DNA of 62,480 bases, filler included, from Hausera hauseri (GCA_046269625.1; 10 parts of 10 records of this genome joined end to end with filler, not necessarily neighbours in it); one strand, 5' to 3'; positions 164 through 49,110 are shown, counted from the first letter of the whole stretch. Numbers and translations: made by a program. The notes: generated by a model from the letters alone, not told the origin.

Positions 164-1700
164 TCAAGTTTTCTCCAATTTGTCGGTATAGGTTTTTGGA
201 TAATGGTTTGAGGACAGTGACGTACTGCTGCAAAAATTATCGATATCGAAACTGGGACTGACTGATGAATTATTCGCATTCTGGGCCATACTTACTCTGC
301 TAAAATAAAAATAAAGGTCAATCCTAAGACAGATAATCGTTTTGAAATAAAACATTTTCTCCGTCTGATGATAAGATAACCCGATCTGTAGTTGTCAGGT
401 TATTCTATCATAAAGTCCGTTTTGGTACCCTTTTACCCATTAATCTCCGTTTCGATTTTTACAGCGTTTGTTACAATTTCTAAAAACTAGAAAAGCCTTC
501 GCTGTTATTATGATAAGAACGAAAATTGACAAACTGAATATAGTTATTATCGGTAAGTTATTCGGTTTAGTAGAACTTTCCGCGGTGAACACATTTTGCA
601 TACTAAGATCTCTACACTGCATTACTTTAATTTTATTGCCAGGACTTCGTACTGTAAAAGTTTTAGGGTTCTTACCATCTGCGGTCATTCTGATTATATA
701 GTCATGTTGCGGTCGTAATAACCTGCATTTAGTTTCCTTACTATTCTTTCTTATGATCACAACTTGGTTGGTGTGCAGGGTGCGACATTCAATTTTGACG
801 TCTCAATTTAACTTCTCCTTAGCGTAAAATAGAATTCTATCGCCTTTTGCCAAAATCTTAACTGGCGTGCTTCCTGGCATTTCGTCTGAAGTGACGATCG
901 TAATAGTGGGAGTCGTTCTCGGAGCAATGGACGGTTTTCTCGTAGTGGTTTGAAATGGAAGTTTCCATATTCCGTTTTTCGGACGATATCCTCTTAAATA
1001 AGTACTTCGCTCTCCCGGGTGCGTATTATACAAATCGAACTGTAACTGATAATCCTGTCCTAGTTGTATTACACAGCACGCAGTAGATCGGCGTTTGGCC
1101 AGAAAACAATACTCCGAATTAGGAATAGAAGCATCCAATGGTATAAATCGAACAGAAATTTGCCTGTCTCCGGGCAGTTCTATTTTGTATTCAATCCGTA
1201 TACATTGATTCTTGAAGTCTTTGTAAATCACGTTAATGTGATAATCTAAGAGTCTTTTAACGGGTCAGTGCATCGGAGTATTTTGTCTGACTTGGCTTGA
1301 TTTGCGTCCTTTCGTTGGGGCATTCTTATCATAAGTTCTGAAAGTATATAAGCTTGAGCTCCAAACTGATTAGAATAAAACATTTGAAATCTTTATGCGT
1401 AGGCTTGTCCAAAATCTAAATCACAACATCTTTTGTGTTGTCCGTACGGAAAATCACAGGTTTTCATCGTGTTTCCGGTGACAAATATTATCTGAAATTT
1501 CATATAACTCGGAATGGGTTCGCTTGCTTTAAACCATGCACATGTCGTGTACTCTAAGTGATTGCATGTTCTGGATATCCCTGCGTTTCATCGCGTATCG
1601 TAGTTTTTCAGCTCTAGTTATTGATGTCACCTTTGGTACATAGGAAGCGATTAATGATAAGGCAAGAATTATTTGTACATGTGATATCGGTCTCGTAACG
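164..1700 (-). pseudogene. Disrupted type I membrane protein with FN3-like repeats in the env position, read on from integrase
   Basis: Signal-like HVQIILALSLIASYVP follows the integrase tail in ORF 1529..2047. Three repeats end in CCDLDFGQAY, CCVIQLGQDYQLQF and CRLLRPQHDYIIRMTA. There is a Thr-rich linker and a TM segment LPIITIFSLSIFVLIII followed by basic residues. Confidence 0.5.
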
Positions 1701-4039
1701 ATTGACGATGTTTTCTTTTCTTTATTTGCTTTGCTTGAACGCAATTTATAGCGCTTGTCTGCTTTCATTTCCGTTTTAACTACTATCTGAATTGATATAT
1801 CCTCTTCCTTGCCGTTTTTATTTATATAAACCGTGGTCGGCGTAATCTTAGTAACTTCATAAGGTCCTATGCCTGTTCTAGTAAGTTTGAGAGACGTGCC
1901 TTTCTTTGCCACTGGATAATGTACATAAACCCAATTTCCGGGTTCTAGATCGTGTGGTTTAGCCTTCGTATCATACTGTTTCTTGAATTTTTCCTGGTAT
2001 TCTTTAGATAATTCTTTGGCTATTTCCCAACAGTTGTGCAATCTCAATTGTAATGCTTCAACAAAATTCTGCTCTAAATCTTCAGTTCTTGTTGTGTATG
2101 GGATCAGTCATAAATCTGTAGGAAGCACCGCTTCTCTTCCATACATCATAAAAGTGGAGTGAATCCTGCCGTAGGATATGGAGTAGTATTAATGGCGAAC
2201 TCTGTACCTTATATGAACTCATCCCAATCCTTCTGGTCCTTTGCGATTACTGTCGATAAGATTCGTATAACGGTCGCGTTCATTCGTTCGACCATTCCAT
2301 TACATTGGGGATGATAAGCTGTGGTAGTTAGTCGTTCAATTTTGAAAATCTTAGTAATTTTATCGAAAAGTTCGCTCGTAAAGTTTTTTACTCGGTCTGT
2401 CAAGATTTGTTCGGGTGGCCCGTATCTACAAATGATTTTCCGGACTACTGCTTCTGCTAAGGTCTCGGCCTTTTGGTCTAATAACGCTATAAGTGCGACG
2501 AAATAAGTCAATCGGTCTATACAGGTCAAAATGTATTTGTTATTCCTGTGGGTTGTAGGCAAGGGTCCTACAATATCCATAAACATTGCGTGCATTGGTC
2601 TATCGGGCACGTCGATAGGCTTAAGCTCGGCGACGTAATTTTTTACTTTTCTTTGCTTGGTTGCGCATACATCGCAAGCATTCCCCCAATTTCTCACGTC
2701 GATATAGATGCTCGGCCAATAGTACTTATTTAAAATCCTTTCTAATATCTTTTTCCACGACATGTGTCCAGCTAAGTAGGAATCATGTTCGGCCATGAAT
2801 ACTTCCGTTCGTAATCCTTTCGGTATGATGACGAATTTCCGTCCTTTTCGTTTGTAGTATAACACATTTTCACAATTCAAATCTTCAGCAACGCAGTATT
2901 TGTGACCATGTCGTCGTAAGTGTTTCCGTAGTTGATGCGCTTTGGGTGTTACGTTAGTATCAACGAACTCGATAATCTGTTGTATAACCCTGTCTTTTCT
3001 CTGTTTGACAACAATTTTTAATGATTGTCCAGTGTGAGAGTCCGTTGTTTCTCTACTAAGTCTTCAAGGTGAGCTTTTCTCATTACCGTAACTGCGCTTG
3101 TTTTCGTTTTAAGTCCCGATAGTGCATCAGTATCGACATGTTTACTTCAGGGCTTGTATTGGAACTCGATATTATATCGCGATATCTCCTCAATCCATCT
3201 GTTGAGTATACAAGTTGGATTATTCGCTCTACCATTCAAAGTTGTAACTGCCTTATGATCCGTAACGATTACGATCTTTTGTCCGTAGACATATACATTA
3301 AAATTCCACAGTGCTTCTTTTACTGATAATGTTTCTAGTTCCGTAACGGAATAGTTCCTTTCTGCTTTCTTTAGAGAACGTCATCCGTATGCAATCGGGT
3401 GTTCTAATTCCTCGTCTTCTCGTTTTTGGGCCAGTTCATATCCGATACCTTCCTTACTTGTGTCTGTTTTGATTATGAATGGTATGTTGAAGTCGGGATA
3501 TCTTAAAACAGGTTCGCTAGTTAGAATTTTCTTCATTTCATCAATAGCCTTTTGTTCAACATGGGTTCATTTCCATTTGATCCCTTTCTTTAATAAACGA
3601 TACAGGGATGCATTTATCTCTGCGTTTCCTGGCACGTAGGTTGCGTAATATCCACATAGTCCTAGCCAGTGCCTTAATTAATTTTGATTTATGGGCTCCA
3701 TGAAGTCCGATATTTTACTTAACAGTGATTTATCCGGTTTTGACCCTCCTTCTCCTACTATATGTCCGAGGTAATATACAGCATTCTGAGCCCATTTGCA
3801 CTTCTTGGATTCAGTTTCAGTCCAGCTTGCTCTAATCTCATGAGTGTATCTTCAATATCCCTTAAATGATCTTCTTCCGTTTTTGATGCAATTATGACAT
3901 CGTCCAAATAGGCAAATGCGTGTTCCAGTCCCATTAGCATCTTCTTCATCATGCGGGTAAAAATGGCTGGTTCGGGAGTTATTCCAAATGGCATAACATT
4001 AAATTCGTATATACCGTCATGTGTCTTAAATTCTATTTT
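1700..4039 (-). mobile_element. pol: Ty3/Gypsy pol fragment (RT-RNaseH-integrase), degenerate
   Basis: RT MPFG and YLDD; RNase H YPDFNIPFIIKTDTS and YSVTELE; integrase HHCC (EHDSYLAGH...CDVC), DIVGPLP, TTAYHPQCNGMVERMN, GPY motif. Order is RT-RH-IN. Confidence 0.95.
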
Positions 4040-4139
4040 NNNNNNNNNNNNNNNNNNNNNNNNNNNNNNNNNNNNNNNNNNNNTTAATTAATTAANNNNN
4101 NNNNNNNNNNNNNNNNNNNNNNNNNNNNNNNNNNNNNNN
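4040..4139. other. Artificial contig linker (N-TTAATTAATTAA-N). Others at 10319-10418, 15765-15864, 21910-22009, 29721-29820, 34632-34731, 42647-42746, 47523-47622, 57635-57734
   Basis: Identical 100-nt spacer with stop codons in all six frames. Confidence 0.99.
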
Positions 4140-5270
4140 GGGGAAGTAGCCTAGAAAAACCGCGTTGAGGCAGCGTTAACTCATTTAATTTCTTATTTAT
4201 GTTGTTAATTGTCTTTTGTAACATTTTATTTTCTGTGCATTATTGCGCAATTTGTTGCTGCGGAATTGCATTTTGTTACTGTTGGTCTGTTGTTAATGCC
4301 GCAGAGATAGTTGGTTCTGTGTGTGAGTGCAGTACTTCATATGCTTTGTCCGCCAGTTCGGCTAGCTTTTCAAGAGCCGTGGAGTCTTCAACCACAGTTA
4401 GCAAAGCTCTTATTTGAAGGGGCAGTGCATTTAGAAAATAGCGACAAAGAAGTTCTGGACTATGCTGAGATGTTACGTCAAGGGTATTGAGATGAGACAA
4501 AGATGTGCTCAAGAATTCAGAGAGCTTCTGAAGGCCCAAGGCGTTGTCACTGAAGAATCTTTCAATAATAGAGTCGATTGACGGCTCAGTGAGCTTAAGA
4601 ATATCATTATAAAGTTGAGTATATGGGTCGGTGTGATGAAGGGTGTCAATGATATTGGTAATTTTAGTTTTGATAGAAGCTGGTAAATGAAAAAAGGCTG
4701 TTGGCTTTGGATAAAGAGTCGACGACGTTTTGTGATTTGAGCCAGAATTGATGAAGTTTTAACCAAGTTAGAGTACAGTTTTGGCTATCGAGGAAATATT
4801 CTGTACAGGGTGAATGAGTGAGGGGTGTGTTGTGTGAAAGTGTTTGAAGCATTTTGTTTGGGTAAGTAAGTGATAGAGACCTGTGGTTTGGTGGGTTTGT
4901 CCGTGGTATCACTTGTAGGTGGTGAATCCATGCCACCGCGGATGCGGAAGTGAATGTAAAGACAGACACAAATTGTAGAAGGTTGTAGGAGTCCAGCGAA
5001 AGGCACTATAGATACATTGTGTTAGATAGAAGTCAGAGGAGTGAAGTAAGGTAGAGGTGAAGTTGTGAATAGCTGCAGTGTGTAGGTGTGTTACCGTATA
5101 TGTATGAATGTGTTGGTTATTTAAAAAAAAAGAAAATGGAGTGCGAAGGGGTGATATGACCGGGGGCGTGTTGCTGGGCGGCAACAAAAGGTGCTGTATG
5201 ACCCAATGGTGCAGGATAAGCGGCCGGGGCCTCAACCTCGCCGCGGCGGGTCCCAAATTTCGGGGTAACC
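4140..5270 (-). mobile_element. gag: CsRN1-like Gypsy copy A: Ubl-gag 5' part (truncated by contig end)
   Basis: LYIHFRIRGGMDSPP (GG at 4932-4937) and RYFLNALPLQIRALL..LEKLAELADK. Clear nucleotide similarity to copies B-E. Confidence 0.9.
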
Positions 5271-7979: not shown

Positions 7980-9230
7980 TCAAAAAGAGCACAAAACTGT
8001 GTATTGTTTTAAACAAAAATTCACATCAATGTATTTGTTTTTCAAATTGTCACCATGATAATCATTCAATGGACATTTGGTTTGCAATGAAGAAACGTCA
8101 TCGCCGAATTGCGGTTTCATCTGCACATTTTCATCGGACGTGGAAACATCGTTCTGTTGATTATCAGGAATAGTCAGAACCACTGTCATAAATTTGCTAG
8201 AAGAACGCGACATTGATTGGAGAATAAAGTTTTTAAGATTTTCCAAAGACGATTTGTTACGTGAATTCGTCTCGGTAAAATGACGCAATATCATTTCCCT
8301 GTTAAACGGTAATAAACCGATTTTTGAAACGATATCGCCAACAATTTGAAATTGATTTTCTTCCAAAACGATTGCAAAATAGCGGGGAATTTATCATTTT
8401 CTATGGATGGCAGTTGGATAGCGCCAAACCAACGAGAAAGAACGTTTTTACTTACAGAATGTCACTGGATTTCTGCGGCAAGCATACGAGAAGAATTTTA
8501 TTTTGTAAACAAATTGACGAAATGTTGTACGTGATATGACTGCCGTAACTATTTAGAAAAATCAAAATTGGACGGTCGTTGTGATGCTGTTTTTTGTGTG
8601 AGATAAGTTGTGATTTAATCCATACTTCGAAATGCGTCACTTCCATCCAGCCGCTGTCACTGATGGAATACTTCGTTGCTGTACGACTGTTTGTCACCCA
8701 TGACTGGTCAAAAATTGTCGCTTTGTAAACAACAAATGGCGGCAAAACAAGAGAAGAATTGGCATTGTTGCAAATTGAAACTGAATAAATTTTATCACCG
8801 TTAAGAGAAATGACATGTGCTGATCCATCACGAAATTCACAGCAGGATGAATTTAGTGTGGCATTGATTGGTAGCTCACGGAGACTATAGATCTGTGTGA
8901 CGGCATAATGCAGTGAATATTTACGGATCTGACTGAATTCGCGATATGCTGCACTGTAGCCGTTTTGGTAGGATCTTTGCCCATCGTTTTTCGAAATTTC
9001 GAATAAATATATTTGCATGATTTAATTGGTTGTCCAATGGAATACTTCGACTAGCAAAAATGCAAAACTGCATTAGCATGTTTTGTATATCACATTTCCC
9101 CAGTGGCCAACCGTAATCCCCAGCATAACGCAAACATTCGGCAATATGTTTTTCATCTGCTTATTGTAATGCAGATTGTTGTTTTTGTTTTGTACGGGAA
9201 GTAGTATACTTTTGAGTATTTCTCGTAAGT
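7980..9230 (-). mobile_element. pogo/Tigger-type DDE_1 transposase remnant
   Basis: CENP-B-like HTH (YAGDYGWPL), LPPFVVYKA, SDSGWMEVTHFEVW, RPILIFLNSYGSH, LLVCLPQKSSDIL and KIGLLPFN. Confidence 0.85.
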
Positions 9231-9389
9231 GGGCGTATCATTCAAAGAAATTCCATTAATTACAAAATTAATCTTTCAGAGTTTTAATTTTGTTATTGAA
9301 CGATTGCGTTTTAATTGTCGCCATTTAAAGGAATATTAGAGTTTTCCAGACGGTGTAAACAGCATCAATATTGAAATTATACAATTTTC

Positions 9390-9495
9390 AAAGCGGAAGA
9401 TCGGGACCCGCCTATGGACCCGACGCGGCGGCAACGGATGTCCGGCTGTGTCCAACCAAGTGGGCCAAAGGGCACCGGCCGCTGTGTGCACCACA
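9390..9495 (-). repeat. GC-rich ~105-nt terminal repeat starting TGTGGTGCACACA (putative LTR 5' end)
   Basis: Similar along its length to 12375-12487 and 35596-35697. The first 13 nt nearly match the sequence following the PPT of copy E (51065). Confidence 0.75.
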
Positions 9496-9866
9496 TGTAT
9501 TTTCATGGGATTTTGGTGCATTAGTTTCATACGATAGTTTGAAAAATAAGCATAAACCGAAAAATTTTCTCGCAAATAATTACGAAAAATATATCAGTTA
9601 TTATGTCGGATTGTCCACAAGCGACTTGAAATAAGGTTTGTTTCTTGTCGGGTAAAGTAAATACCACTGTTCTGACGTATTTTCATTGGTGAAAATGTAA
9701 ATGTGAATTCTGTCAAAGCCACTTCCCAGGCTCCGTGGTGTAAATCGAGCGGTTGGTCCAAGTGCACGGTAAACTGTTTAGCGGTATGGTTGTCATTGTC
9801 GTCATGTTGTAATAATGATCTGTTATTATCAGGTACCAAGTAAATGCTGCTGCTGCTGCTGCTCAT
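9496..9866 (-). pseudogene. Polinton/adintovirus minor capsid (penton)-like gene, interrupted at 9495
   Basis: NTxxxFTVHLDQPLDLHHGAWEVALTEFTF-type N-terminal motif typical of Polinton minor capsid proteins. It lies directly downstream of a Polinton-type integrase. Confidence 0.7.
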
Positions 9867-9899
9867 TGAATATGTGATGCAAAAATCAAACTCGGTGCT

Positions 9900-10318
9900 G
9901 TGTATCCGTGCAACATGACGAGATATTGTTTATTCGTACGTTTGCCACATGAACGTAGAATTACCTGAATGCGATATACATCGAGTTTCTCGGGAAGTAC
10001 TTACAGTTCATGTTCGTAGAATTTACCGCGTATTTCCTCACCGTTTGTTTTGTGTTGATTGCCGAAATGCGGGAAACCTCGTCGCTCCAGTTCTGATTGA
10101 AATTCTTAAAGAATGGCGTTGTACTTATTTTTGATATACGTACATAATCACCAATTTTATACTTGGGACGACGTTTAGTTGGTCGTCGTCGGTTTTAATA
10201 AAGCCACATATCCAAATCATCGATTACATCAACCGGCCGTAATCCATTGGTACCACGATGTGCCGAATGATTGTATGCATGAATAATATCCGGCAGTACA
10301 TCTACCCAGCATTTGTTG
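9900..10318 (-). pseudogene. Polinton-type retroviral-like integrase, C-terminal part
   Basis: WVDVLPDIIHAYNHSAHRG..RP..PKYKIGDYVRISK..FFKNFNQNWSDE. Confidence 0.85.
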
Positions 10319-21153: not shown

Positions 21154-22851
21154 CTCGAAAGATTTAGTAGTAGTAGTAGTAATTGTACAATAAAAAAAGA
21201 ATAAAAGTTTGATGTGAACGTTTTGTTTTCTCATTACTCGGAAAGAGTTAGGTGGGAAAAGGTGTTGTTCAAAAACTAGGTCACACAAAAAAATTTTATA
21301 GGTAGGGAAATGGTACCGTCCGAAGTGGGTAAATTAAACAAAAAGAAATTTAATAATATGTTAAAATTAATACTAATGTCAAAATTATTAAAGGAAAATT
21401 AAAAATAAACTAACATTCATCTTCTGTTGTCGCAAATTTTCGAAATGACGATAAACTAAGTGCAGTGGTATTTTATATGTTATTGATGTATTTGTTAGTG
21501 TATGTCTTGGTACTACTTTACTGACAAGCACTGTTGACTTTAAAAACACTGACTCTAGAAAAAAACTACATCTAACCAAATGTCCATTATTTTGACACAC
21601 TACCCTTTACACCACTAGTAATAAAACGAATCATGAGGAAAAGTACGACATTTTCATTAGTATGAGTTTCTGCATGCACAAACACATGCTTTACGTCAAA
21701 ACTCACTATTTCGTTTTGATTACATGCATGCACATTTTTAGTCTGGCGCGTAATGCACACTTGTTTTACGTCACGCCTCACTATTGCACGTGTCAACTTG
21801 TCGTACCTGTGCTCAAGATGATAATGATGATGTAGTAGATTTTGAAAAATTTGCTGCGACTTTTAAAACATTTGCGACGACTCGCATTTTGTGATTTTGA
21901 TGACGATGANNNNNNNNNNNNNNNNNNNNNNNNNNNNNNNNNNNNNNNNNNNNTTAATTAATTAANNNNNNNNNNNNNNNNNNNNNNNNNNNNNNNNNNN
22001 NNNNNNNNNCATATTTGCAGTAGCAGAATTATACAAACATGGTAACATTTAACAAATCAATTATTATCTCACCTGAAGGATTATACCTTACTGCTTCTAT
22101 ACACGTGGAGACATCTCAAACATTGAGCAGAATTCACCGTAAGCGCACAAGTAGCTGATATACAAGAAGCGCCTTGATTTCGGATGGGAATATTTCCAAG
22201 ACAACGAAGACAGACAAGGAACATAATGTTTTAGGCCGTGGAACAGTTGAAGAGGAATAGAACCAACGCCAGTCAAACAGAGCCATCGATTAGCCACTGT
22301 ACAAAAAACGTGTGTTTCAACACACTACCGGCTCCGCATTCTCCTGAAAAAGTGCATCTGCTAGACCGGTCTACCCGACAGTGAAACATATGCCAAAGTA
22401 CATAAAAACATACTCCAATTCTTTGATGGCGGTTGGATTCTATCGAGTGCACAGCCCACTTATTTGTTTATCTCCATCCACTCAATTCGTTTTTGTGAAT
22501 TATCTCTGTGAGGAAGTACCAGATGTTGCCGGTATTTCTCGGAACAATTTCGTCATTGGATTTTTAAAATCCTCTTTATTTTGAATTAGATTTAAATTCA
22601 AATCCTTTAAAAAGAACCCAAGTACTGAAATGACTCTTAATGAACCGAGTATTCCTCCAAACAAATTAAGTTCTTCCAATACGTTAGTAAAAACTGATTG
22701 CATTAGTGTATCGAAATATGAAAACACAGTAACATCAAATATTTCCAACAGTCTAAAGATTACCCCACCTGTTACATTGTCAACTTTCTCAAATTCTTTT
22801 GTCAAGCAAGAACCAGCTAGAACAAATAGTGTTCAAAATGTTACAAAACCC

Positions 22852-23412
22852 CATGGATGTATTTATGTATTCCCTTATAATGATTGTACTGGACATTTTT
22901 CGGTTGTCAAAACATTCAAAACGGTCGGTACGCCATTTCCCATGCAGGAATTCGATGGGAAATTATTAGTAACGATCAATGCATCAGTACAACTCATCGA
23001 TTTGACGAAAGATGATTTGCATGTCATTTGTCGATACGATGAGAATATTATTGCATTGTTTCTTAAACGAAAGGATGATTTCATTCTGATCGGTGATTTG
23101 ATGAGATCTGTGACGTTATTGCGATATAAACCGAATGTTGTTCATTTTGAATTGATTGCACAACATCGGGCACCACATTGGACAACAGCCATTGAAATTA
23201 TTGATGATGACAAATTTCTTTTTGATGAAAATAAAATGAATATGTTCGTTGTCAATAGGGATTTTGATATTGCCTCTACGGCAGCTGGTGATGGGGCTAG
23301 ATCAGCTGATGTGCCGATGATGAAGGATGCGCGATTTAAAATGAGTGAATATGCATCAATGCATGTTGGACAGGTTCTCAATAAGTTTATGGCTGGAAAC
23401 ATACTCATGCAA
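22852..23412 (+). pseudogene. DDB1: DDB1 C-terminal beta-propeller fragment
   Basis: MQEFDGKLLVTINASV, NIIALFLKRKDDFILIGDLMRSVTLLRYKP, PHWTTAIEIIDDDKFL, MHVGQVLNKF. Confidence 0.9.
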
Positions 23413-25136
23413 TTTTTACTCGATGAATACTCCATCAAATTAAAAAATTCATCAAATCAAAAACAAAAACTTCAACGGAAAATTGAACAAAAACCAACCA
23501 ATTCTATTCAAGACAAAAAAGTCTTGTCGAGTAAACCGAAATTGATAAAATCCGACGTCTTTGGGAAACAGTCGAGTGTTGGCGTTTCAGAACGATTTTT
23601 CGAATTGGTTGAGCAAATTTGCGAATGGGTTGGTAGTTTGTCCGGAAAGGAATTGGTTGAACGATTGGGCGATAAATGTGGATTGATGACGGAATTATTG
23701 GTGGAAAAAAGTAAATTGTCCAAGTCCTGTAAGATTGATTCATTGAAATTTCATTCTCAAATCGAAAACCCTGTCAACGGACCAGTATTAACCAAACCGA
23801 AGTCAGTCGCAAGTGTTGACAAGTCGTCCGTATTGGATTCACCCGCGAAAATGAATGCAGCAATTCCACCGGAAGTTGACGAAAATGGAGACGTCGAATG
23901 GGAAAACGATGAATTTTTAAATTCATTCGATTTTGTCGAATTCGAAGAGACAGATCTTCATATGCTCAAAGGCAGTAACAATCCAACGAGTACTGTGAAT
24001 TTATTTAAAAATACAAAGCAGAGTGCTGATATGAATGGTGACACGTTTGTGCCAATAACTGAAAAGCAATCGAAATGTACTTCGTCAATAGAAGATTATG
24101 AGTACAATGAACATCCAAACGATGGTGAAACTGGTGAATTCTCTAAAGATTTTCCTCATACTCCGAAAATTATGCAAGCATTTCGAGATGTTTTCGGTTT
24201 AAAAGATTTCCGTCGAAATCAACGGGAAGCAATCAATTCGGCGTTGTTAAAGTTCGATACATTTGCGATAATGCCGACTGTTGGTTGGAGAAGTCTGTGT
24301 TATCAGCTACCGGGCATTGTAACCGATGGTCTCACTGTTGTTATATCAACTTTGAAATCGTTGATTCACGATTAAGTGACCAAACTTCAGAGTTTTGATA
24401 TTAATGCTCGATCAATGACGGTGAGATGTCATTTTCTGAAATAGACAATGTATTTTGTCTATTACAGTCCGTCAAAATGGATGTTAAGTTTTTCTACGTT
24501 ACTCCAGAAAACATTGCAGCATCTCAAAAGTTAATAATTACGTTCGTTTCATTATATAACCGAAATCTTCTCGATCGATTTGTAATAGATGAAACATATT
24601 GCGTCAGCCAATGGGGCCATGATTGTCGGCCAGATTATCGAAATTTAAAATGTCTACGGGAGGAATTCCCCAATGTTCCAATCATCGCATTGACTGCTAC
24701 CGCTACGAATAAAGTTCGTCAAGACATAATTGATTTGATCAATTCGAAATTCCGTGGAGAGAGTAGAATTGTTTACAGTTTGTCACGGAAGGAGTGTGAT
24801 CAAGTGGCACAGGAATCGAACAAAGCTGGTTTGAAAGCAAAATCATATCTCGCCGGTATGGTTGATGGTGCACGATTAAAAGTTCAGCAAATGTGGATAA
24901 ACGAGCAAGATTGCAAAATAGTCTGCACTACAATTACATCTGGCATGGGTACTGATAAAGCGTATGTGAGATTCGTTATCCATTATTCGATCCCGAAATC
25001 TGTCGAGGGATATAACCAGGAAACAGGTCGTGCGGGACGAGACAGACTTCCGGCTGTTTGTATGTTGTACTATTACTACCAGGATGTTACACGAATGCGG
25101 CGTACGATTGAGAGCGATCAAACCGGAAATTGCGAA
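23413..25136 (+). pseudogene. BLM: BLM-type RecQ helicase fragment, inactivated and intronless
   Basis: BDHCT-like FELVEQICEWV, FGLKDFRRNQREAIN, mutated Walker A MPTVGWRSLCYQLP, DETYCVSQWGHDCRPDY, QETGRAGRD. There is an internal deletion after motif III. Confidence 0.9.
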
Positions 25137-25227
25137 TTCCAAAAGTCAGATAGGAAGTATGTTGAAGCCATGAAATGTTATTTGAGAGCATTGAAAATGG
25201 ATAAAGACAACATTCCGATATTGCGCG
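25137..25227 (+). pseudogene. NAA15: NAA15 (NatA auxiliary subunit) TPR fragment
   Basis: QKSDRKYVEAMKCYLRALKMDKDNIPILR versus recalled [29 protein letters not shown]. Confidence 0.75.
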
Positions 25228-25229
25228 GT

Positions 25230-28200
25230 TGGAGGGGAAACTCGGCCACCATTCATTTTGGTTCCAGCCCCGCCGGGGCGGGGATCCCGACGGTCAACCC
25301 TGCGCCGGTCGGTCGGACGGCGCTTATGCGTCGGCTTACATCACGCCCCCAGGCGCACCACTCCTTCCCCTTCTGTTTTCTTTTCCCTCAATAATACCCA
25401 CATTTACACAATCACTACATCACATCCACACATTCTCACCCTTTGTAGCTCCATTTCCTTTTTACTCAATTTTTCCGATTTTTATTTCACCCATAACGGC
25501 GCTATCATACCTCTCACCGGAATCCTACCATCTTTCTCAAGCCACACTTGCCTCCACATACATCTCCGTATCCGTGGTGGCATGAACTCTTCGCCAACCA
25601 TTGACACCACGGATGAAACCACCACAAAACCAATACCTGTTATATTACTCCTAAAACCCACTCCTAACTCTGCTATCAACCTCACAGCCATTACCTCTTC
25701 CGCGCCTTTCCATAACTGCACCGAGTTTTTTAGTGACAAACAAGGCTCCAGCAAAACTTGGTTACAATTTCATCAAATATGGCTACAGGCAAGTAACATT
25801 ACCGACTCTAACTAAAGCACATAATCTTCTCTTCTTATTATCTAATAATATCAAAACGCGCATTCACAACATCGTCGAAATTTTCGAACTTCCAGACCCA
25901 TATTCCCAACTTTCTAACGCAGTTCCTAAGATCACAGAACCTTCCATGGACACGATCAAACAACGTTTCATCCACGACAACGTTATAGGCACCCAACGGA
26001 CATCAGAATTCTCATGCACATTCTTAGCACACCTACATACTCTCGGCGTCACTAAGGAACACAATACAGACCTACTGCGCCACTATTTCCTCAATGCACT
26101 ACCTATCCAAATCCGAGCAATACTTACCGTGGTGGTAGACTCCACACCGCATGAGAAATTAGACGAATTAGTCGATAGGACAGACGATGTCCTACACGTA
26201 AATTCTCCACCAGTTGTTTCAGCAGCAGTTGCCGCTAACGATAATATATCCATAGAACAACAGCTTAATCAGCTACGTGATGAAAATATTGCATTGCATA
26301 AAACAATCAACAATATAAATAATAACTTAAACGAATTGTCTCTGGCCCGCCGAGAGGGTTTTGCCGCTGACCGCACCCGCTCTGCGTCTAGAAACTGCCC
26401 ACCATCGCCTGCGCGTTCGTCGATTTGCTATTACCACAGCAGATTTAATACTAATGCTCAGAAGTGCTGCTAGGGTGCAAATTTTATAACAAGAGTTTTT
26501 CCTCAGACACATTTGTTTGCATTTACCATGCAAGGTTCAAAAATCAGGTTCGTAAATGTATTCCAGGTTGCACTTTCAAATCAAACATAAACGACAGACT
26601 TACTGCCTTTCCTTTTAATAGTCGTCCTAGTTCACCCTTTCAAAAAATCTAAGTTCCCCGCCAGAAGGCGCGGCAAACTCTGGTAATGGCACTACTTAAC
26701 TTTCTGAACGCCGACACGTCTCTTTTGCTGTCTTTACACTAAAGGCTGCAATCACTGCTCCTACAACACAATCTGTTGATTTCCTTATCAATACAGGTTT
26801 AGCAATTTCTTTATTACCACAAACCTTTCGTGCACAAAATTCTCCATTCAAAATCAAACCCTTATACACTGCTTCAGGCCAACCGCTGCACATTTTTGGC
26901 GTGGCTAAATTATCTTTCACATTACCAAATTTTCTTTTACCTTTCCACTGGACGTTCACAGTCGTTAACGTCCAGACTGCAATTCTAGGATCCGACTTTC
27001 TCTCACACTATAATTTATTGGTTGAATGCAGTCAGCGATGTTTGAAAAACGGCAGCACTGGCGATATTTCTGGACATGTCTATAGCATTTCGACTACCGC
27101 GCAGTCGACCAGAACGCGGAGGTCAATCTTAAAAAATTCAATGAATAATTCGATTTTTTATAACAATAATTCCATTTGTAAATTTTAAAATAATAATATT
27201 GATATACGATCGAGGTTCGATGTCGATAATTGTGGTACTGCCACCAACGTTAATTCATTCGACGAAAATACTTTATTTAACACCATTTTCACTTCTACCA
27301 TCTTACACCAAATACCACTTGACTGCACGTCACCCAACAACTCACAAATGGCATCCGCTACTACTCAAGTTGTCTCACTACTTCCACCGAATCTCTCACA
27401 GTTACATACAACTTTACAGCAATTCGTCAACACATCATGTCCACTCGTACTTAAAAAAGACCGTACGTTTACTCCCGCAAACAGTACCTTACACCATATA
27501 GTTACACAGCTTTAACGACCAATACACCAAAAGGTACGATCTCTGTCACCTCGTCGTAGACAGGCCGTAGAAGCCGAATTTCTTGAGCTAGAACTTTCCG
27601 GCATAGTACGACGTTCCAAATCTCCTTGGTCACCTTTACATGTTGTACAAAAAGGACGGTACTTTTAGAGCATGCGGTGACTACCGACAGCTAAACAACT
27701 TTAATATCATGGATGCATACCCTTTAGCACTCATCAAGGATATCTTGCATCGCCTTAATTCAACCACCATCTATTCGACCATTGATTTAGCTAAAGCATA
27801 CCATCAAATACCGGTGGCACCCCAAGACATAGAAAAAACTTCTGTAACTACTCCTTTTGGTCTCTATGAATACCTGTTTATGTCATTCTGTCTGCGAAAT
27901 GCAGCACAAACTTTTCAGCGGCACATTAATTCAATTCTTTCCGATTTCCCATTTGCACACCCTTATATCTATGATATGCTAGTCGTTTCATCTTAGCCCA
28001 AATAACACGAGGAACACCTTTGCGCAGTATTCCAACGTCTTAACCACCATAATCTCAAAATCAATTTCGACAAATGCCATTTTTTTAAAAAGCGCATTAA
28101 CTTTTTAGGCTACGTTATTACACCAGACGGTCATTCGCCCCAATCAGACCGAGTCGAAGCTCTTAAAAATATCCAGTTGCCACGTACAACCATCGAAATG

Positions 28201-29720
28201 CGCAGCTTCCTTGGCACACTACACTTTGTACATAAATATGTACCATATTGCTCCGATTTGACAGCATCATTCGCACACCTAAGCGGCGGCAAAAAACATT
28301 AGTCAATCCAGTGGATACCTCAATTGGTTGACAAATTTGAAAAGCTACGCGAAGGAATCAAAACCGTCAATATCCTAGCTTTCCCCAAGCCTGATGCAAA
28401 ACTTATCCTTACTACAGACCTGTCAACCTCTGCAGTAGGCGCTGTACTCCGAGAGATCTACAAAAGAGAAAATCAACCACTAGAATTTTTCGCTCGCAAG
28501 CTAACAGCACCTGAAACCAGATATTCCACGTTCGATCGTAAACTATTGGCCACCGTTCTCGCTTTAAAGCATTTCTCACATCTACTTGTCGCTCGTCATT
28601 TCACTCTACAAACCGATCACACGCCCTGACCTAACATCATGGCTATGAAACACCCTTCCACTTGCCAAGAACGACAAACATCATACTTATCGACATTTAA
28701 CTTCGATATTAAACATATTAACGGGGTTAACAATTTGGTTGCTGACTTTTTTATCTAGGTCGGTTAGTTCGATTAATTTTTCACCGATCTTTACGCAAGA
28801 CCAACTTCAACAGAACCAGCCGCCTCAGGACATGCTCAATTCTTTTAAATCTTGCACAATCGTTGACGGCGTGGCTTTAGACACCTCAAAACCAGGCCAT
28901 TCCGTAATAATTCTTGCACCATCATTGCAAAGGCAAGCTTTTCACAGCGTGCATTCACTACACCATCCTGGTGCTAAAGCCACTTTCCGTTTACTCCATC
29001 GACAAGTAATATGGCCGTCAATGCGTTCTGATGTGACAGGCATGGGTTAAGGAGTCTGTGGCTTGCCAAAAATACAAAACAACTAAGCATTTAAAGCCAC
29101 TACTATTCCACTTTCCTTGTACATCGCGTTTCGCGTCCGTGTATATCGACATCGTTAGCCTTTTCCTCCAGACAACGGTCATCAATTAATTCTCACCATG
29201 ATGGACCGTTCCTTGCGATGGCCATCCCTCTGCGGAGCACAAACACCGACACTATAGCTGATGTTTTCATTCGCACATGGATTAGCAGGTTTGGATCCCC
29301 TCGTTTCATCATCACCGACCAAGGCCCAAAATTTGAATCCAACCTGTTTAAATCCCTCGTCAATCGTTTGGGGATCCATCATATACATACTACACCTTAC
29401 CACCCACAATCGAACGGCTTACTGGAACGTTTCCACCGTACTTTGAAAACGTCCCTACGAATTCTCGCAGAGTCCAACAGTAGCTGGACCAATCTTCTCC
29501 CATTCGTTCTGCTCGGTTGGCGAAACACCCCATCGACCTCTACAGGATGTTCACCTACTGAGGCACTATTTGGAACTCCCGTTCGCTCTCTATTCGAACT
29601 AACTGCTTTGGACGACACTCCCACGGAAGAGACGATTCGGGCGGCGCAAAATCACTTTGTCGAGGTCAGTAAGGATTCGTTTTGCAGGTTACTGCACAAA
29701 GATAAAACATACTTACCCGA
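25230..29720 (+). mobile_element. CsRN1-like Gypsy copy B: Ubl-gag-PR-RT-RH-IN, degenerate
   Basis: HIHLRIRGGMN (GG at 25576-25581), two CxxHx9Cx3C knuckles, ILGSDFL, RACGDYRQLN, YSTFDRKLLA, TTPYHPQSNGLLERFHR. Confidence 0.95.
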
Positions 29721-38794: not shown

Positions 38795-41700
38795 CAGTTA
38801 CTCAGAAATTTGAAACTCGCCGAGGTGAGACTGAGGTCCCGGCCGTCCACCCTTCACCATAGGGTCAGACGGCGCCGTTCTTTGCCGCGCCACGACACGC
38901 CCACAGCCACACGACCAATCCTTATCTCCTTTTCTTTTTTCTCAACAACAGACACATTTGCACACATACAGTAGTACATGTAAACGCAGCTGTCATCCAT
39001 AACATCATTTCCACTTCTCTTCACTCCTCTGATTTCTATCTCACACAATGGATTCGTAGTGCCTTTCGCTGGACTCCTCCAACCTTTCACAACTTGTGTC
39101 TGCCTTCACATTTACTTCCGTATCCGTGATGGCATGGATTCACCACACACAACTGATACCACGGACAAACCCACCAAACCAGAGATCTCCATCACTTACT
39201 TACCCAAACAAAGTGCTTCAAACATTTTGACACAACACACTCCTCATTCATTCACCCTGCACAGAATACTTCCTCTACAGCCAAAACTCTACTCAGACGT
39301 GGCTAAAACTGCATCAATTCTGGCTCCAATCATAAAACGTCGTCGACTTTTTATTCAAAGCCAACAACATTTTTTTTGTTTACCAGCTTCCATCAAAACT
39401 AAAATTACCAACATCATCGACATCCTTCATCACACCGAACCATATACTCAACTTTGTAATGCTGCTGTTAAGCTCACTGAGCCGCCAATCGACTCAGTCA
39501 TTCAAAGACTCTTCAACGACTACGCTATGGGCCTACAGAAACCTTCTGAATTCTTGCGTACACCTTTGTCTTACCTCAAAACCCTTAGCGTAACATCTGA
39601 GCATAGTCCAGAAGTTCTTTGTCGCTATTTTTTAAATGCACTGCCCCTTCAAATAAGAGCTTTGCTTACTGTGGTGGAAGACTTCACGGCAATGTAAAAG
39701 CTAGCTAAACTGGCGGACAAGGCCTATGAAGTACTGCACCCACATACAGCACCAACTACCTCTGCGGCACTAACAACAGAACAACAACAACAAAATACAA
39801 TGCTTCAGCAACAAATTGCGCAATTACGCTCGAAAAATGAAATGTTACAAAAGACAATTAACTACATAAATGAGAAATTAAATGAGTTAACGCTGCCTCG
39901 ATGCGGTTTTTCTAGGGCTGCTTCCCCCAATGTATTTCATCAACGGTTGCCTTCGCCGGCGCGTTCATCTATCTGCTACTACCATAACAAATTTGATAAT
40001 AATGCTCAGAAATGCTGCATCGGTTGTAAATTTTACTCCCCCGGTTTTAACACAAATAACATTGTTTGCATCTATCATTCGAAATTTGGCACAAAAGCAC
40101 AAAAATGCCTACCTGGCTGTAACTACAACACACAATAAAACCAACACTACTATGCTCACACAAAACAGTAGGTCAGACTCACCAGCTACAAAAAACTGAT
40201 TTCGCCGCTAGGACACACGGCAAGTCCTAGCAAAGACAACAACCTGCAAAAAGATAGCCGATACATTTCTTTTGCTATATTCACGTTGGAAGCAGCAGTC
40301 GTCACTCCAATAAAGCAAAACATTAACTTTCTTATAGACACCGGCGCAGCAATCTCTTTACTGCCACCAACACAACATATCCAAAACAATTTCACTTCAA
40401 AATGCAACTGTTCACTGCGTCCGGTGAACCTTTACAAATTTTTGGTGTTACCAAATTAACGTTCATTCTTCCACATTTCCCAAATAAATTCACTTGGAAA
40501 TTTACAATAGCCAATGTACGCACACCTATATTGGGTTCAGATTTTCTGTCCCACTACAATTTACTTGTAGATTGCAAACGATGTTTTTAAAGAGCGGAAA
40601 TAATCTTAATCAAATTGGCGGCATTTCGGTGACCACCCGAGCGATAGCTTCCAACAAGTCAATACTGAAGCAAACGACTTCCGATTTAAATTATTTTTAT
40701 AATAATACATTATAGAAAAATTTTTACTACGGTAACAAATACGATATTGCAACTGCGTGGCACATATTACTGATAGCACAGCTGCCAACACCATCTTTAA
40801 CACGAACATCCTGCACCAAATACCACCTAGTCACAACACCTTGTCTACAACTCATACCTCAACTGCATCCAGTCACGATGCATCGACACCATCGGATAAC
40901 TTTTCATCGTTGCCTTCTGATCTACAGCAATATATTTCGTCTTCCTACACGCGTCTGTTGCAGAAGGACAAATCATTCGTACAACCTCAATCCACCTTCC
41001 ATCACATCGTAACAGCATATCAAAGACCAATGCGGTAAAAGGTCCGCCCGCTATCGCTTCACCACAGACAGGCACTGGAGGCTGAGTTCCTCGACCTTGA
41101 AAAATCAGGCATAATCAGAAGATCCAAATCCCCCTGCTTTTCACTGCTGCATGTGGTTCCAAAAAAGATGGCACCTTTCGCCCATGCGGTGATTACCGCC
41201 AACTCAACATCATAACAACAATAGATGCCTACCTTCTACTATTAATCAACGATATGCTTCACAGGCTCTATGGTGCGACCATTTTCTCCTGCATTGATTT
41301 ACACAAAGTATACCACAAAATTCCGAGGACCCCATCAGACATTCGGAAAATGGCTGTCATTACACCTTTTGGCCTTTTGGAGTACATTTTCATGCCTTTT
41401 GGACTCTGTAGAGCTTTCCAGATCTTCCAAAGCCATAGTAATACAGTTCTCTCAGGTTTAGACTTTGCTTATTCCTATATTGCTAGTATCCTAATTGCAT
41501 CATCTTCCTCGAAACAACACTCCGAACACTTACGTCTAATCTTCCAACGCTTGCACCAAAACAATTTGCAAATTAATTGCGCCAAATTCTCTTTTTTCAA
41601 CATAAGGTCAACTTTCAAGGACATGTTATTACCTCCTCCGGACATTCACCTCAGCCAGAGCGCATCACACAGCTGAAAAAAATACAACTACCACGTACAT

Positions 41701-47622: not shown

Positions 47623-49110
47623 TTTAGATTGTTGCCTATGCTAGAACTTGCCGTATCCTAGCGGTGAAATCAATTTTTTGTAGTTGGTGAGTTAGGCCTA
47701 CTATTTTGTGTGAGCTTAATAGTGTTGGCTTTATTATGTGTGTTGTAGTTGCAAGCAGGTAGGCATTTTTGTGCCTTTGTTCCAAATTTTGCGTGATAGA
47801 TGCAAACGATGTTACTTGTGTTAAAATCGGGGGTATAAAATTTACAACCGATGCAACATTTCTGAGAATTGTTGCCAAATTTGCTGTGATAGTAACATAT
47901 AGACGACCGCGCGGGCGAAAGCGACCGTCTTTGTCGTTGACGAAATATATCAGGGGAAGCAGCCCTAGAAAAACTTTGTCGAGGCAAAGTTAATTCATTT
48001 AATTTCTCATTTATATTATTAATTGTTTTTTGCAACATTTTGTTTTCTGTGCGTAATTGCGAAATTTTTGCTGTAGCATTGCATTTTGTTGTTGGTAGTT
48101 TGTTGTTAATTCCACAGAGACAGTTGGTGCTGTGTGTGATTGCAGCACTTCATAGGTTTTGTCCGCCAGTTCGGCTAACTTTTCCAGTGCCGTGTAGTCC
48201 TCGATCACAGTGAGCAAAGGTCTTATTTGAAGGGGCAATGCATTTAAAAAGTAACGACGAATTTCTGGACTATGCTCAGATGTTATGCCAAGGGTATTAA
48301 AGTGAGACAAAGATGTGCGAAAGAACTCAGACAGTTTCTGAAGGCCCATGGCGTTGTCATTGAAGAACTTTTGAATGATAGAATCGATTGACGGCTCAGT
48401 AAGCTTAAGAACGGCATTATAAAGTTGAGCATATGGATCGATGTGGTGAAGGATGTCAATGATATTCGTAATTTTGGTTTTGGTAGAAGTAGGTAAATGG
48501 AAAAACAGGTTGTTGGCTTTGTATAAGGGGTCCACGACGTTTTGTGATTGGAGCTAGAATTGGTGCAGTTTTAACCATGTTTGGGTAGAATTTTGGCTGT
48601 CGAGAAAGTATTCTGTGCAGGATGAATGAGTGGGGAGTGCGTGATGTACTTTGAAGCACTTTGTTTTGGTAGGTAAGTGATGGAGATCGGTGGTTTGGTG
48701 GCTTTTTCCGTGGTGTCTATGATGGGAGAGGAATTCATGCCACCACGGACACGGGGGTGAACATGAATAATGAAGGAAGACTGTGTTGAAGAAAAGAAAT
48801 CGGCAAGACTGTAGAGTATGAAGCCGTGATGACTGAGGAAAAATTCGTTTGTTTGTCGTAGTGCAGACATGATTGTACAATTGGATTATTTTGGTGTGTT
48901 GTGTTATTTCGTATGTTGTGGCATGTTCATTATTTAGAAGGAAAACGGAGAAAGTGGGTGTCTGATAGTCGGGAGTGTAATGCGGGACGAGTACATGGCC
49001 AATCGCCTCTCTCCCCTGCATGGGAACATAGACCGGGTGCACGGTATCCCGGGGACGGGGCCGCAATTTGCGGGAAGGGCCGCACTCGTCGCCGAATTTG
49101 GTCGGGCGGC
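47623..49110 (-). mobile_element. gag: CsRN1-like Gypsy copy D: Ubl-gag (truncated by contig end)
   Basis: IHVHPRVRGGMNSSP (GG at 48739-48744), double CHCC knuckle, AAAAAAT slippery site. Confidence 0.92.

What the first reader, a model, noticed from the sequence alone, without database searches (positions are those of the whole stretch)
25372..25584. Retrotransposon Gag begins with a ubiquitin-like domain ending in RxRGG|Met, in all five CsRN1-like copies
Seen: a ~70-aa segment precedes the Gag Met, e.g. copy B SVFFSLNNTHIYTITTSHPHILTLCSSISFLLNFSDFYFTHNGAIIPLTGILPSFSSHTCLHIHLRIRGG|MN. Equivalents: A 4932-5137 (FRIRGG|M), C 38924-39133 (FRIRDG|M), D 48739-48955 (PRVRGG|M), E 56065-56277 (FRVRGG|M). 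The motif is kept although the copies have diverged. Known: ubiquitin ends in LHLVLRLRGG, and ubiquitin/SDE2-type fusions are cut after GG by deubiquitinases. The FYFTHNG segment resembles the SDE2-type Ubl. Inference: Gag is made as a Ubl fusion and released by a host DUB. This would give a defined N-terminus whatever is translated upstream, and would free a possibly conjugatable or decoy Ubl. I do not know of this in Ty3/Gypsy Gag.
Basis: partly seen in the sequence, partly recalled or inferred. Interest (0 to 1): 0.92.

Follow-up and report, generated by a model that had tools for sequence, protein, structure and literature searches.

The report
Ubiquitin-like domain fused before retrotransposon Gag
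A CsRn1-like LTR retrotransposon encodes a small ubiquitin-like domain, ending in the Gly-Gly that cells cut after, directly in front of its capsid protein Gag. The element seems to borrow the cell's ubiquitin-precursor processing, and I found no description of this for such elements.

Summary
An open frame alone means little here: the DNA is G-poor, so about 1 shuffle in 10 stays open, and two of three forward frames are open. Homology does show it is coding. Fifteen diverged Gag relatives carry an aligned 70-80 residue segment that ends in an invariant GG, 15-49 residues before the Gag core. A profile of those segments, built without the window, picks out only this frame of the piece (E 1.6e-9; 5e-5 from the distant members alone). 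A profile of the family finds only ubiquitin and ubiquitin fusions in the PDB, with GG aligned on G75-G76. AlphaFold models of the window segment (pLDDT 80) and of an intact relative (P0004) give a beta-grasp fold. Against ubiquitin the window model scores Z 10-11 at rmsd about 2 A. All Ubl-bearing Gags fall in one clade of the Gag tree. Cleavage after GG by host deubiquitinases is the likeliest mechanism, but it is inferred, not shown. This particular copy is a dead relic: it has no in-frame ATG upstream, a frame change in gag and a fragmented pol. The SDE2 resemblance is not supported. My first idea, an LTR plus primer-binding site, was rejected.

The parts
22630..25200 (+). Context, not part of the element. 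Intronless, broken ORFs with a CPSF_A/DDB1-like region and RecQ-type helicase pieces, on the same strand and abutting the element.
   Evidence: Pfam CPSF_A E 4e-31, Helicase_C E 5e-12. Composition switches at about 25220.
25226..25255 (+). Possible last ~30 nt of a 5' LTR (R-U5), ending in CA. The rest of the LTR is not in the piece.
   Evidence: Other contigs keep related but more diverged sequence here and re-join at 25256 (loose ends). A CA at 25254-25255 is followed by TTT and then TGG. Weak evidence.
25256..25335 (+). GC-rich conserved leader with a candidate primer-binding site that starts at TGG 25259.
   Evidence: GC 0.6-0.68. Summed contig depth rises to 1674-4168. There is no protein-level similarity to relatives upstream of 25336. 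All five listed 1-nt length differences between copies fall at 25327-25337. The ATG at 25326 is in another frame.
25336..25371 (+). Short N-terminal extension where protein-level homology to relatives begins.
   Evidence: tblastn alignments of P0001, P0002 and P0151 start at 25336-25342.
25372..25581 (+). Ubiquitin-like (beta-grasp) domain of 70 codons with the tail L-R-I-R-G-G. The Gly-Gly codons are 25576-25581.
   Evidence: HMM E 1.6e-9 and 5e-5. AF2 pLDDT 79.7 with strand-strand-helix-strand-strand-strand order. Foldseek top hits are ubiquitin, SUMO and ISG15, TM 0.72-0.83. VIA Z 10-11.2, rmsd 1.7-2.3 A over 67-70 residues against ubiquitin 2-76.
25569..25615 (+). Predicted RNA hairpin: an 11-bp stem (25569-25579 with 25605-25615) and a 25-nt loop that holds the ATG at 25582.
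   Evidence: MFE -19.1, z -1.99, 4 of 200 shuffles fold as well. It is one of the three longest local inverted repeats in the 7.7-kb piece. The shared block ends at 25613-25614. At 25615 most other contigs read A, which makes the closing pair Watson-Crick.
25582..25812 (+). Linker and Gag N-terminus with the conserved FF-x-D...W-L motif at 25726-25773. This frame ends at the stop 25813-25815.
   Evidence: Same frame as the domain. The motif aligns with nearly invariant columns of A1 and A2. Depth peaks at 25738-25778.
25811..26652 (+). Gag core (DUF7041-type region, coiled coil, CHCC zinc knuckles). It continues in another frame after a frame change near 25810, and the second knuckle is in a third ORF piece.
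   Evidence: 476 Gag relatives at E up to 1e-3. ORF list. Invariant C/H columns.
27640..29718 (+). pol remnants in separate ORF pieces: RT 27640-27993, RNase H 28324-28626, integrase zinc domain 28739-29047, integrase core 29218-29718. The last is cut by the edge of the piece.
   Evidence: Pfam RVT_1 3.6e-11, RT_RNaseH_2 5.4e-24, Integrase_H2C2 6.6e-9, rve and rve_3.

Best explanation
One clade of CsRn1-like Ty3/gypsy retrotransposons has a gag ORF that begins with a diverged ubiquitin-family domain. The domain probably derives from a captured ubiquitin gene. It ends in a ubiquitin-type tail (basic or Gln, then Leu/Ile, x, Gly, Gly) and is joined to Gag by a 15-49 residue flexible linker. The likeliest mechanism is that translation starts upstream of the domain. 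Host deubiquitinases, the enzymes that mature polyubiquitin and ubiquitin-ribosomal-protein fusions, then cut after Gly-Gly. That frees Gag with a defined N-terminus and releases a free Ubl that ends in GG. Shown here: the fold, the homology to ubiquitin, the invariant GG, the single reading frame with Gag, and inheritance with the element. Inferred: the cleavage, the start codon, and any later role of the freed Ubl. The copy in this window is a decayed relic and is not expected to express anything.
For: Fifteen relatives carry the segment with invariant GG, and the residue after GG is M, S, N, G, A, D or T, never P. Pfam ubiquitin PF00240 matches that same segment in three relatives (E 4e-5, 1.9e-4, 1.1e-3), just under the curated cut-off. 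A profile of A1 against PDB sequences returns 190 hits; all 60 rows shown are ubiquitin, ubiquitin fusions or ISG15. Profile positions 78-146 align with ubiquitin 9-76, with GG on G75-G76. The window segment is recognised by profiles built without it. AF2 plus Foldseek and VIA give a ubiquitin fold for the window segment and for the intact relative P0004. P0004 starts with Met 15 residues before the first strand, and its residues 94-106, GG included, are disordered. On a Gag-core tree all Ubl-bearing rows sit in one 16-row clade. The other five rows are four N-terminally truncated proteins plus P0042, which on inspection also ends in GG. Pairwise identity of the Ubl (mean 18%) tracks that of the Gag core (36%), r 0.57, as expected if the two are inherited together. 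The strong negative GC skew (about -0.7) sets in by about 25350, whereas the leader just upstream is GC-rich with little skew.
Against: No biochemical evidence exists for cleavage. This copy has no in-frame ATG between the last upstream stop and the domain. The window's version has no Lys and only one acidic residue, an odd make-up for a soluble Ubl. No single sequence reaches Pfam's ubiquitin threshold, and mono-ubiquitin scores only E about 0.03 against the profile. A Met directly after GG in the window and in P0001, inside the loop of a predicted hairpin, would also fit separate initiation of Gag. I could not get DNA of any other copy, so LTR ends, the primer-binding site, start codons and dN/dS are untested. 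No RNA run holds the locus.
Confidence: 0.68

Rival explanations
1. The domain is a permanent, uncleaved N-terminal UBL of Gag, like the UBLs of Rad23, Ddi1 or ubiquilins. It would dock Gag or particles onto proteasomes, ubiquitin receptors or ESCRT components.
For: The fold and the hydrophobic residue at the ubiquitin Ile44-equivalent position are kept. From my own knowledge, engineered ubiquitin-Gag fusions can replace retroviral late domains. Some predicted proteins have long extensions in front of the domain, so it is not always at the very N-terminus.
Against: Integral UBLs as a rule do not keep a C-terminal diglycine (established knowledge). Here GG is invariant in 15 of 15 while its neighbours vary, proline never follows it, and a disordered linker does.
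Confidence: 0.17
2. In the window's own subfamily the domain is a vestige. Gag would be translated from the ATG right after GG, perhaps helped by the hairpin that holds that ATG, and the upstream frame would stay open only because the DNA is G-poor.
For: Met follows GG in the window and in P0001. There is no in-frame upstream ATG here, and shuffles stay open 10% of the time. A hairpin at 25569-25615 coincides with the block most shared between copies. The domain's composition is odd.
Against: The window's domain is 33-34% identical to those of P0001 and P0002, whose Gag cores are only 43-45% identical to the window's. It aligns with them in one frame. It still models as a confident beta-grasp. 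P0002 and P0163 have no Met after GG.
Confidence: 0.1
3. The segment is non-coding LTR (U5) and leader, and the conserved CGTGGTGGCATG is the LTR end plus a primer-binding site that starts with TGG. This was my own first reading.
For: TGG occurs at 25575-25577 within the only G-rich cluster of a G-poor stretch (GTGGTGGC, 25574-25581). The distance from the composition switch at about 25225 (about 350 bp) matches LTR sizes in this clade, 146-383 bp. The clade's primer-binding site begins TGGTG (tRNA-Trp). In yeast Ty1 the gag ORF starts in the LTR and the primer-binding site is coding (my own knowledge).
Against: Protein-level homology and fold, as above. The bases before this TGG are not CA, and 25226 and 25572 show no matching inverted termini. 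A canonical CA-TTT-TGG junction lies upstream at 25254-25261, where between-copy conservation starts. Complementarity to a tRNA-like 3' end does not extend past about 8 nt on inspection.
Confidence: 0.04

Closest known systems
Ubiquitin and Ubl precursor fusions of cells: polyubiquitin, Ub-eS31 (RPS27A), Ub-eL40 (UBA52), FUBI-eS30 (FAU)
   Same: A ubiquitin-fold domain sits N-terminal to an unrelated protein, a diglycine lies exactly at the junction, and the next residue is not proline. These proteins are the top PDB sequence hits of the family profile.
   Different: The partner here is a retrotransposon capsid/nucleocapsid protein. Identity to ubiquitin is only about 13-17%. Several predicted proteins have extra residues in front of the domain. 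Processing is not demonstrated.
Cytopathic pestiviruses (BVDV) with captured ubiquitin or Ubl inserts in the polyprotein (own knowledge)
   Same: A genetic parasite carries a host-derived ubiquitin-type sequence directly upstream of one of its proteins, and host ubiquitin C-terminal hydrolases create that protein's N-terminus.
   Different: In pestiviruses these are sporadic, recent, near-identical captures in individual strains of an RNA virus. Here the domain is old, diverged, fixed in a whole clade of LTR retrotransposons, and placed before Gag.
CsRn1 / PwRn1 / AgCR clade of Ty3/gypsy elements (PMC2582038)
   Same: Gag has CHCC zinc knuckles and high Gag conservation, and the order is gag then RT, RNase H, integrase.
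   Different: The published description mentions no ubiquitin-like domain. Most of the 150 best Gag relatives lack it. ORF1 of the mosquito members is 756-984 bp, little room for an extra ~75-residue domain plus linker.
SDE2
   Same: An N-terminal Ubl is removed after a diglycine by deubiquitinases (established knowledge).
   Different: No SDE2 Ubl model matched any member at E up to 1. No GGKGG-type junction is conserved. Ubiquitin itself is the nearest relative.
DDI1 / Ddi1 (UBL plus retropepsin-like protease)
   Same: A ubiquitin-like domain is combined with a retroelement-type protein module.
   Different: It is a host gene. Its UBL is integral and not followed by a processing diglycine, and its partner is the protease, not Gag (own knowledge).

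Membership tests
Ubiquitin-like (beta-grasp) fold | Strand-strand-helix-strand-strand-strand topology that superposes on ubiquitin | tested here: met
   The window segment has strands 2-6, 10-14, 37-41, 44-46 and 61-67 and helix 21-32, pLDDT 79.7. Foldseek TM 0.72-0.83. VIA Z 10-11.2, rmsd 1.7-2.3 A over 67-70 of 70 residues. P0004 residues 16-90 give the same fold.
Ubiquitin family (Pfam PF00240) | Sequence match above the curated threshold | tested here: inconclusive
   The best single sequences score 23.7, 21.6 and 19.2 bits against a cut-off of 25.4, all on the right segment. The window segment alone gives no hit. At profile level all 60 PDB rows shown (of 190 hits) are ubiquitin-type, but mono-ubiquitin is only E about 0.03.
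Processed ubiquitin-type modifiers and fusions | Diglycine at the end of the tail after the last strand, with a non-proline residue next | tested here: met
   GG is invariant in A1 and A2 and in 15 of 15 members. The next residue is M, S, N, G, A, D or T.
Processed ubiquitin-type modifiers and fusions | Actual cleavage after GG by a deubiquitinase; activation by an E1 | not testable with these tools
   This needs biochemistry. Complex prediction offers no eukaryotic deubiquitinase reference.
SDE2-type Ubl | Match to the SDE2 N-terminal Ubl model and a GGKGG-type junction | tested here: not met
   No such family appears at E up to 1 for the window segment or for 10 relatives. Junction residues vary.
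CsRn1 clade of Ty3/gypsy | Gag with CHCC (C-x2-H-x9-C-x3-C) knuckles | tested here: met
   The pattern is present in ORFs 25733-26473 and 26464-26652. The C/H columns are invariant in A2. The definition is from PMC2582038.
CsRn1 clade of Ty3/gypsy | tRNA-Trp primer-binding site next to the 5' LTR, and a 4-bp target duplication | tested here: inconclusive
   There is only a candidate TGG at 25259, after CA-TTT. Most other contigs read TGGTG there. The LTR body and the 3' end are absent from the piece, and no DNA of other copies was obtainable.
LTR / primer-binding site (rival reading of 25372-25590) | LTR ending in CA with inverted termini, followed at once by TGG and tRNA complementarity | tested here: not met
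   The bases before the TGG at 25575 are CCG. No terminal inverted repeat was found. The stretch is protein-coding by homology.

The most novel reading that the evidence does not exclude
The freed retrotransposon Ubl, which ends in a ubiquitin-like R-x-x-G-G tail, is itself active. Either the host's E1-E2-E3 machinery charges and conjugates it, or it acts as a decoy that ties up ubiquitin enzymes or deubiquitinases. The element would then make its own ubiquitin-like modifier in step with Gag. In the window's family the Ubl has no lysine, so it could cap chains but not extend them.
Probability: 0.1. Interest if true: 0.92.

Novelty: new variant of a known kind. Interest (0 to 1): 0.78.

Why it matters
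LTR retrotransposons and retroviruses are thought to mature Gag with their own aspartic protease. Here a whole clade seems to hand the first cut to the host's ubiquitin-precursor machinery, a trick known so far from sporadic pestivirus recombinants. If confirmed, this would be a natural ubiquitin-fusion expression system inside a transposon. It would link transposon dosage to deubiquitinase activity, and it would give a simple sequence marker for the clade. It also corrects annotation: what looks like a 5' leader in these elements is coding, and the many genomic copies add ubiquitin-like ORFs that can contaminate host gene sets. The predicted proteins that fuse host domains to Ubl-Gag show this already happens.

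Tried and rejected
(1) My first reading was LTR plus primer-binding site, based on the G-poor composition, the open-frame statistics and the TGGTGG motif. I dropped it after the homologues appeared.

(2) Searches that led nowhere:
- Pfam on the window segment alone found nothing.
- The ESM Atlas gave no usable hit.
- Rfam on 25100-25900 gave only a chance-level snoRNA match.
- The search for homologous proteins with the Gag piece found nothing within its length window. With alignment A2 it found 3 proteins, none with a name or a precomputed Pfam domain.
- The listing of cluster members gave no names or taxa.

(3) DNA of other copies or relatives:
- The metagenome scan gave one 1.3-kb Gag C-terminal fragment (L001).
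- The viral scan gave nothing.
- So LTR mapping, Gly-codon comparison and dN/dS could not be done.

(4) The search of earlier findings was not open.

I then aligned whole proteins by id and cut columns in scripts.

(6) Expression: the only run that holds the locus is kept as contigs and is not on record as RNA, so there is no evidence either way.

(7) The differences listed are this copy's private changes and say nothing about selection, so I made no codon-position test from them.

(8) No complex prediction was run, because no eukaryotic deubiquitinase can be supplied.

Full report
What is in the piece. Up to about 25200 the + strand carries intronless, broken ORFs with a CPSF_A/DDB1-like region and RecQ-type helicase pieces. 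At about 25220 the composition switches to a GC-rich block. From about 25350 it turns strongly G-poor (GC skew about -0.7) and stays so through gag. Downstream lie a CsRn1-type Gag with CHCC knuckles, RT, RNase H and integrase. All are split over several ORF pieces, and gag changes frame near 25810. So this is a decayed copy of a CsRn1-like Ty3/gypsy element, cut by the edge of the piece inside integrase.

The observation. I first took this for LTR or leader plus a primer-binding site. The stretch has few G, so two of the three stop codons are rare. Two of three forward frames are open, and shuffles stay open 10% of the time per frame. No ATG lies in frame upstream. The clade's primer-binding site is said to be tRNA-Trp-like, starting TGGTG (PMC2582038).

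What changed my reading. A full HMMER search with the Gag piece found 476 relatives. The closest ones carry, in front of Gag, an extension that ends in GG. In all I found 15 such proteins, counting P0042 and P0163. GG is invariant, and the position five residues before the cut is R, K or Q in 14 of the 15. The next position is L, I or A, and the residue after GG is never proline. GG lies 15-49 residues from the conserved FF-x-D...W-L motif of Gag. Pfam's ubiquitin model matches this segment in three of them, just below threshold. A profile of alignment A1 returns 190 PDB hits; all 60 rows shown are ubiquitin, ubiquitin fusions or ISG15. The register is end to end, with GG on G75-G76.

Is the window's own segment part of this? 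A profile of the relatives' segments, built without the window, hits one piece among 141 six-frame pieces, namely this frame (E 1.6e-9). Built from the eight distant members only, it still hits (E 5e-5), ending on GG. tblastn of P0001, P0002 and P0151 aligns in one frame from 25336 to 25809, across the domain, the GG, the linker and the Gag N-terminus. The domain and Gag are therefore one reading frame. Protein-level similarity begins about 12 codons before the first strand.

Fold. AlphaFold2 of the 70 window residues with A1 gives pLDDT 79.7 and the ubiquitin order of strands and helix. Foldseek returns ubiquitin, SUMO, ISG15 and FAT10 (TM 0.72-0.83). The VIA second look gives Z 10-11.2 at rmsd 1.7-2.3 A over 67-70 residues against ubiquitin 2-76. 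P0004 is an intact 401-residue relative that starts with Met 15 residues before the first strand. Its model shows a beta-grasp at 16-90 and a disordered stretch at 94-106 that includes the GG. A helical Gag, a coiled coil and two knuckles follow.

Distribution. On a FastTree of 135 Gag cores, every Ubl-bearing row falls in one 16-row clade. The remaining five rows are four N-terminally truncated proteins plus P0042, which has a diverged Ubl ending in GG. Pairwise identity averages 18% in the Ubl and 36% in the Gag core, and the two correlate (r 0.57). This fits one old acquisition inherited with the element and evolving about twice as fast as Gag. Sources are ENA, JGI and Logan assemblies without names or taxa.

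Where the non-coding parts probably are. Contigs of the single run that holds this DNA were laid at 80% identity or more. They show a conserved GC-rich block at 25256-25327. It is preceded by CA-TTT-TGG at 25254-25261, and most other contigs read TGGTG there. This is the canonical look of an LTR end plus primer-binding site. All five listed 1-nt length differences fall at 25327-25337, just before coding homology starts. On this reading only about 30 nt of the LTR survive upstream. That layout is tentative.

A second layer at the junction. The block most shared among contigs is 25533-25614. RNA folding puts an 11-bp stem at 25569-25579 with 25605-25615, and the ATG at 25582 sits in its loop (z -1.99). 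At 25615 most other contigs have the base that makes the closing pair Watson-Crick. Within this family, nucleotide conservation of the motif may therefore also reflect an RNA element, perhaps for separate initiation of Gag. I could not test covariation.

Mechanism. The invariant diglycine, the ubiquitin-type tail, the absence of proline after it and the flexible linker together are the signature of fusions matured by deubiquitinases. These include polyubiquitin, the ubiquitin-ribosomal fusions and FUBI-eS30. From my own knowledge, the same holds for ubiquitin inserts in cytopathic pestivirus polyproteins. I judge that the likeliest mechanism. A permanent UBL, or a vestige bypassed by internal initiation in this subfamily, remain possible. 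Nothing here demonstrates cleavage.

Literature. Six of the ten permitted full-text searches and reads of the PwRn1 and Saci2 papers found no mention of a ubiquitin-like domain in CsRn1-clade or other LTR-retrotransposon Gag. The original CsRn1 paper is not held.

I had no DNA of other copies, no RNA data and no taxon names. I built no consensus of copies.

Noticed in passing
window 22630-25200 (+): Intronless, frame-broken fragments of two unrelated host-type genes lie head to tail on the same strand: a CPSF_A/DDB1-like region fused in frame to a RecQ-helicase N-terminus, then the rest of the helicase. They directly abut the element's leader, where the LTR body should be. Contigs of run X1 cover this stretch several-fold (7 contigs at one site). 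It could be a chimeric retrocopy made by template switching from the element's RNA onto host mRNAs. That is speculation.
   Followed up: partly
P0002/P0151, P0015/P0154, P0079, P0123, P0163 (proteins): Several database proteins join host domains upstream of Ubl-Gag in one predicted protein: Rrp44 cold-shock plus CNOT1 CAF1-binding in one, histone H2A in another. These are either gene-model artefacts or the same kind of chimera as in the window.
   Followed up: partly
window 25569-25615 (+): An 11-bp RNA hairpin has the post-GG ATG in its loop. It coincides with the end of the block most shared among the family's contigs, and most other contigs carry a base at 25615 that improves the stem.
   Followed up: partly
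window 25372-25581 (+): The window's Ubl has no lysine and a single acidic residue, and is rich in His, Ser, Thr, Ile, Leu and Phe. P0002, P0008 and P0163 also have no Lys in the domain, while other members have 4-8.
   Followed up: partly
window 25328-25450 (+): The first half of the Ubl (strands 1-2 and the helix) is the part of the element least shared between contigs of run X1 (summed depth about 360, against 9000-10000 at the tail). The domain's N-terminal half evolves fastest.
   Followed up: no
P0004, P0009: In two families the residue exposed by a cut after GG would be Asn followed by Asp. Asn is a tertiary destabilising N-terminal residue in the N-degron pathway. Other families would expose Met, Ser, Gly, Ala, Thr or Asp.
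   Followed up: no
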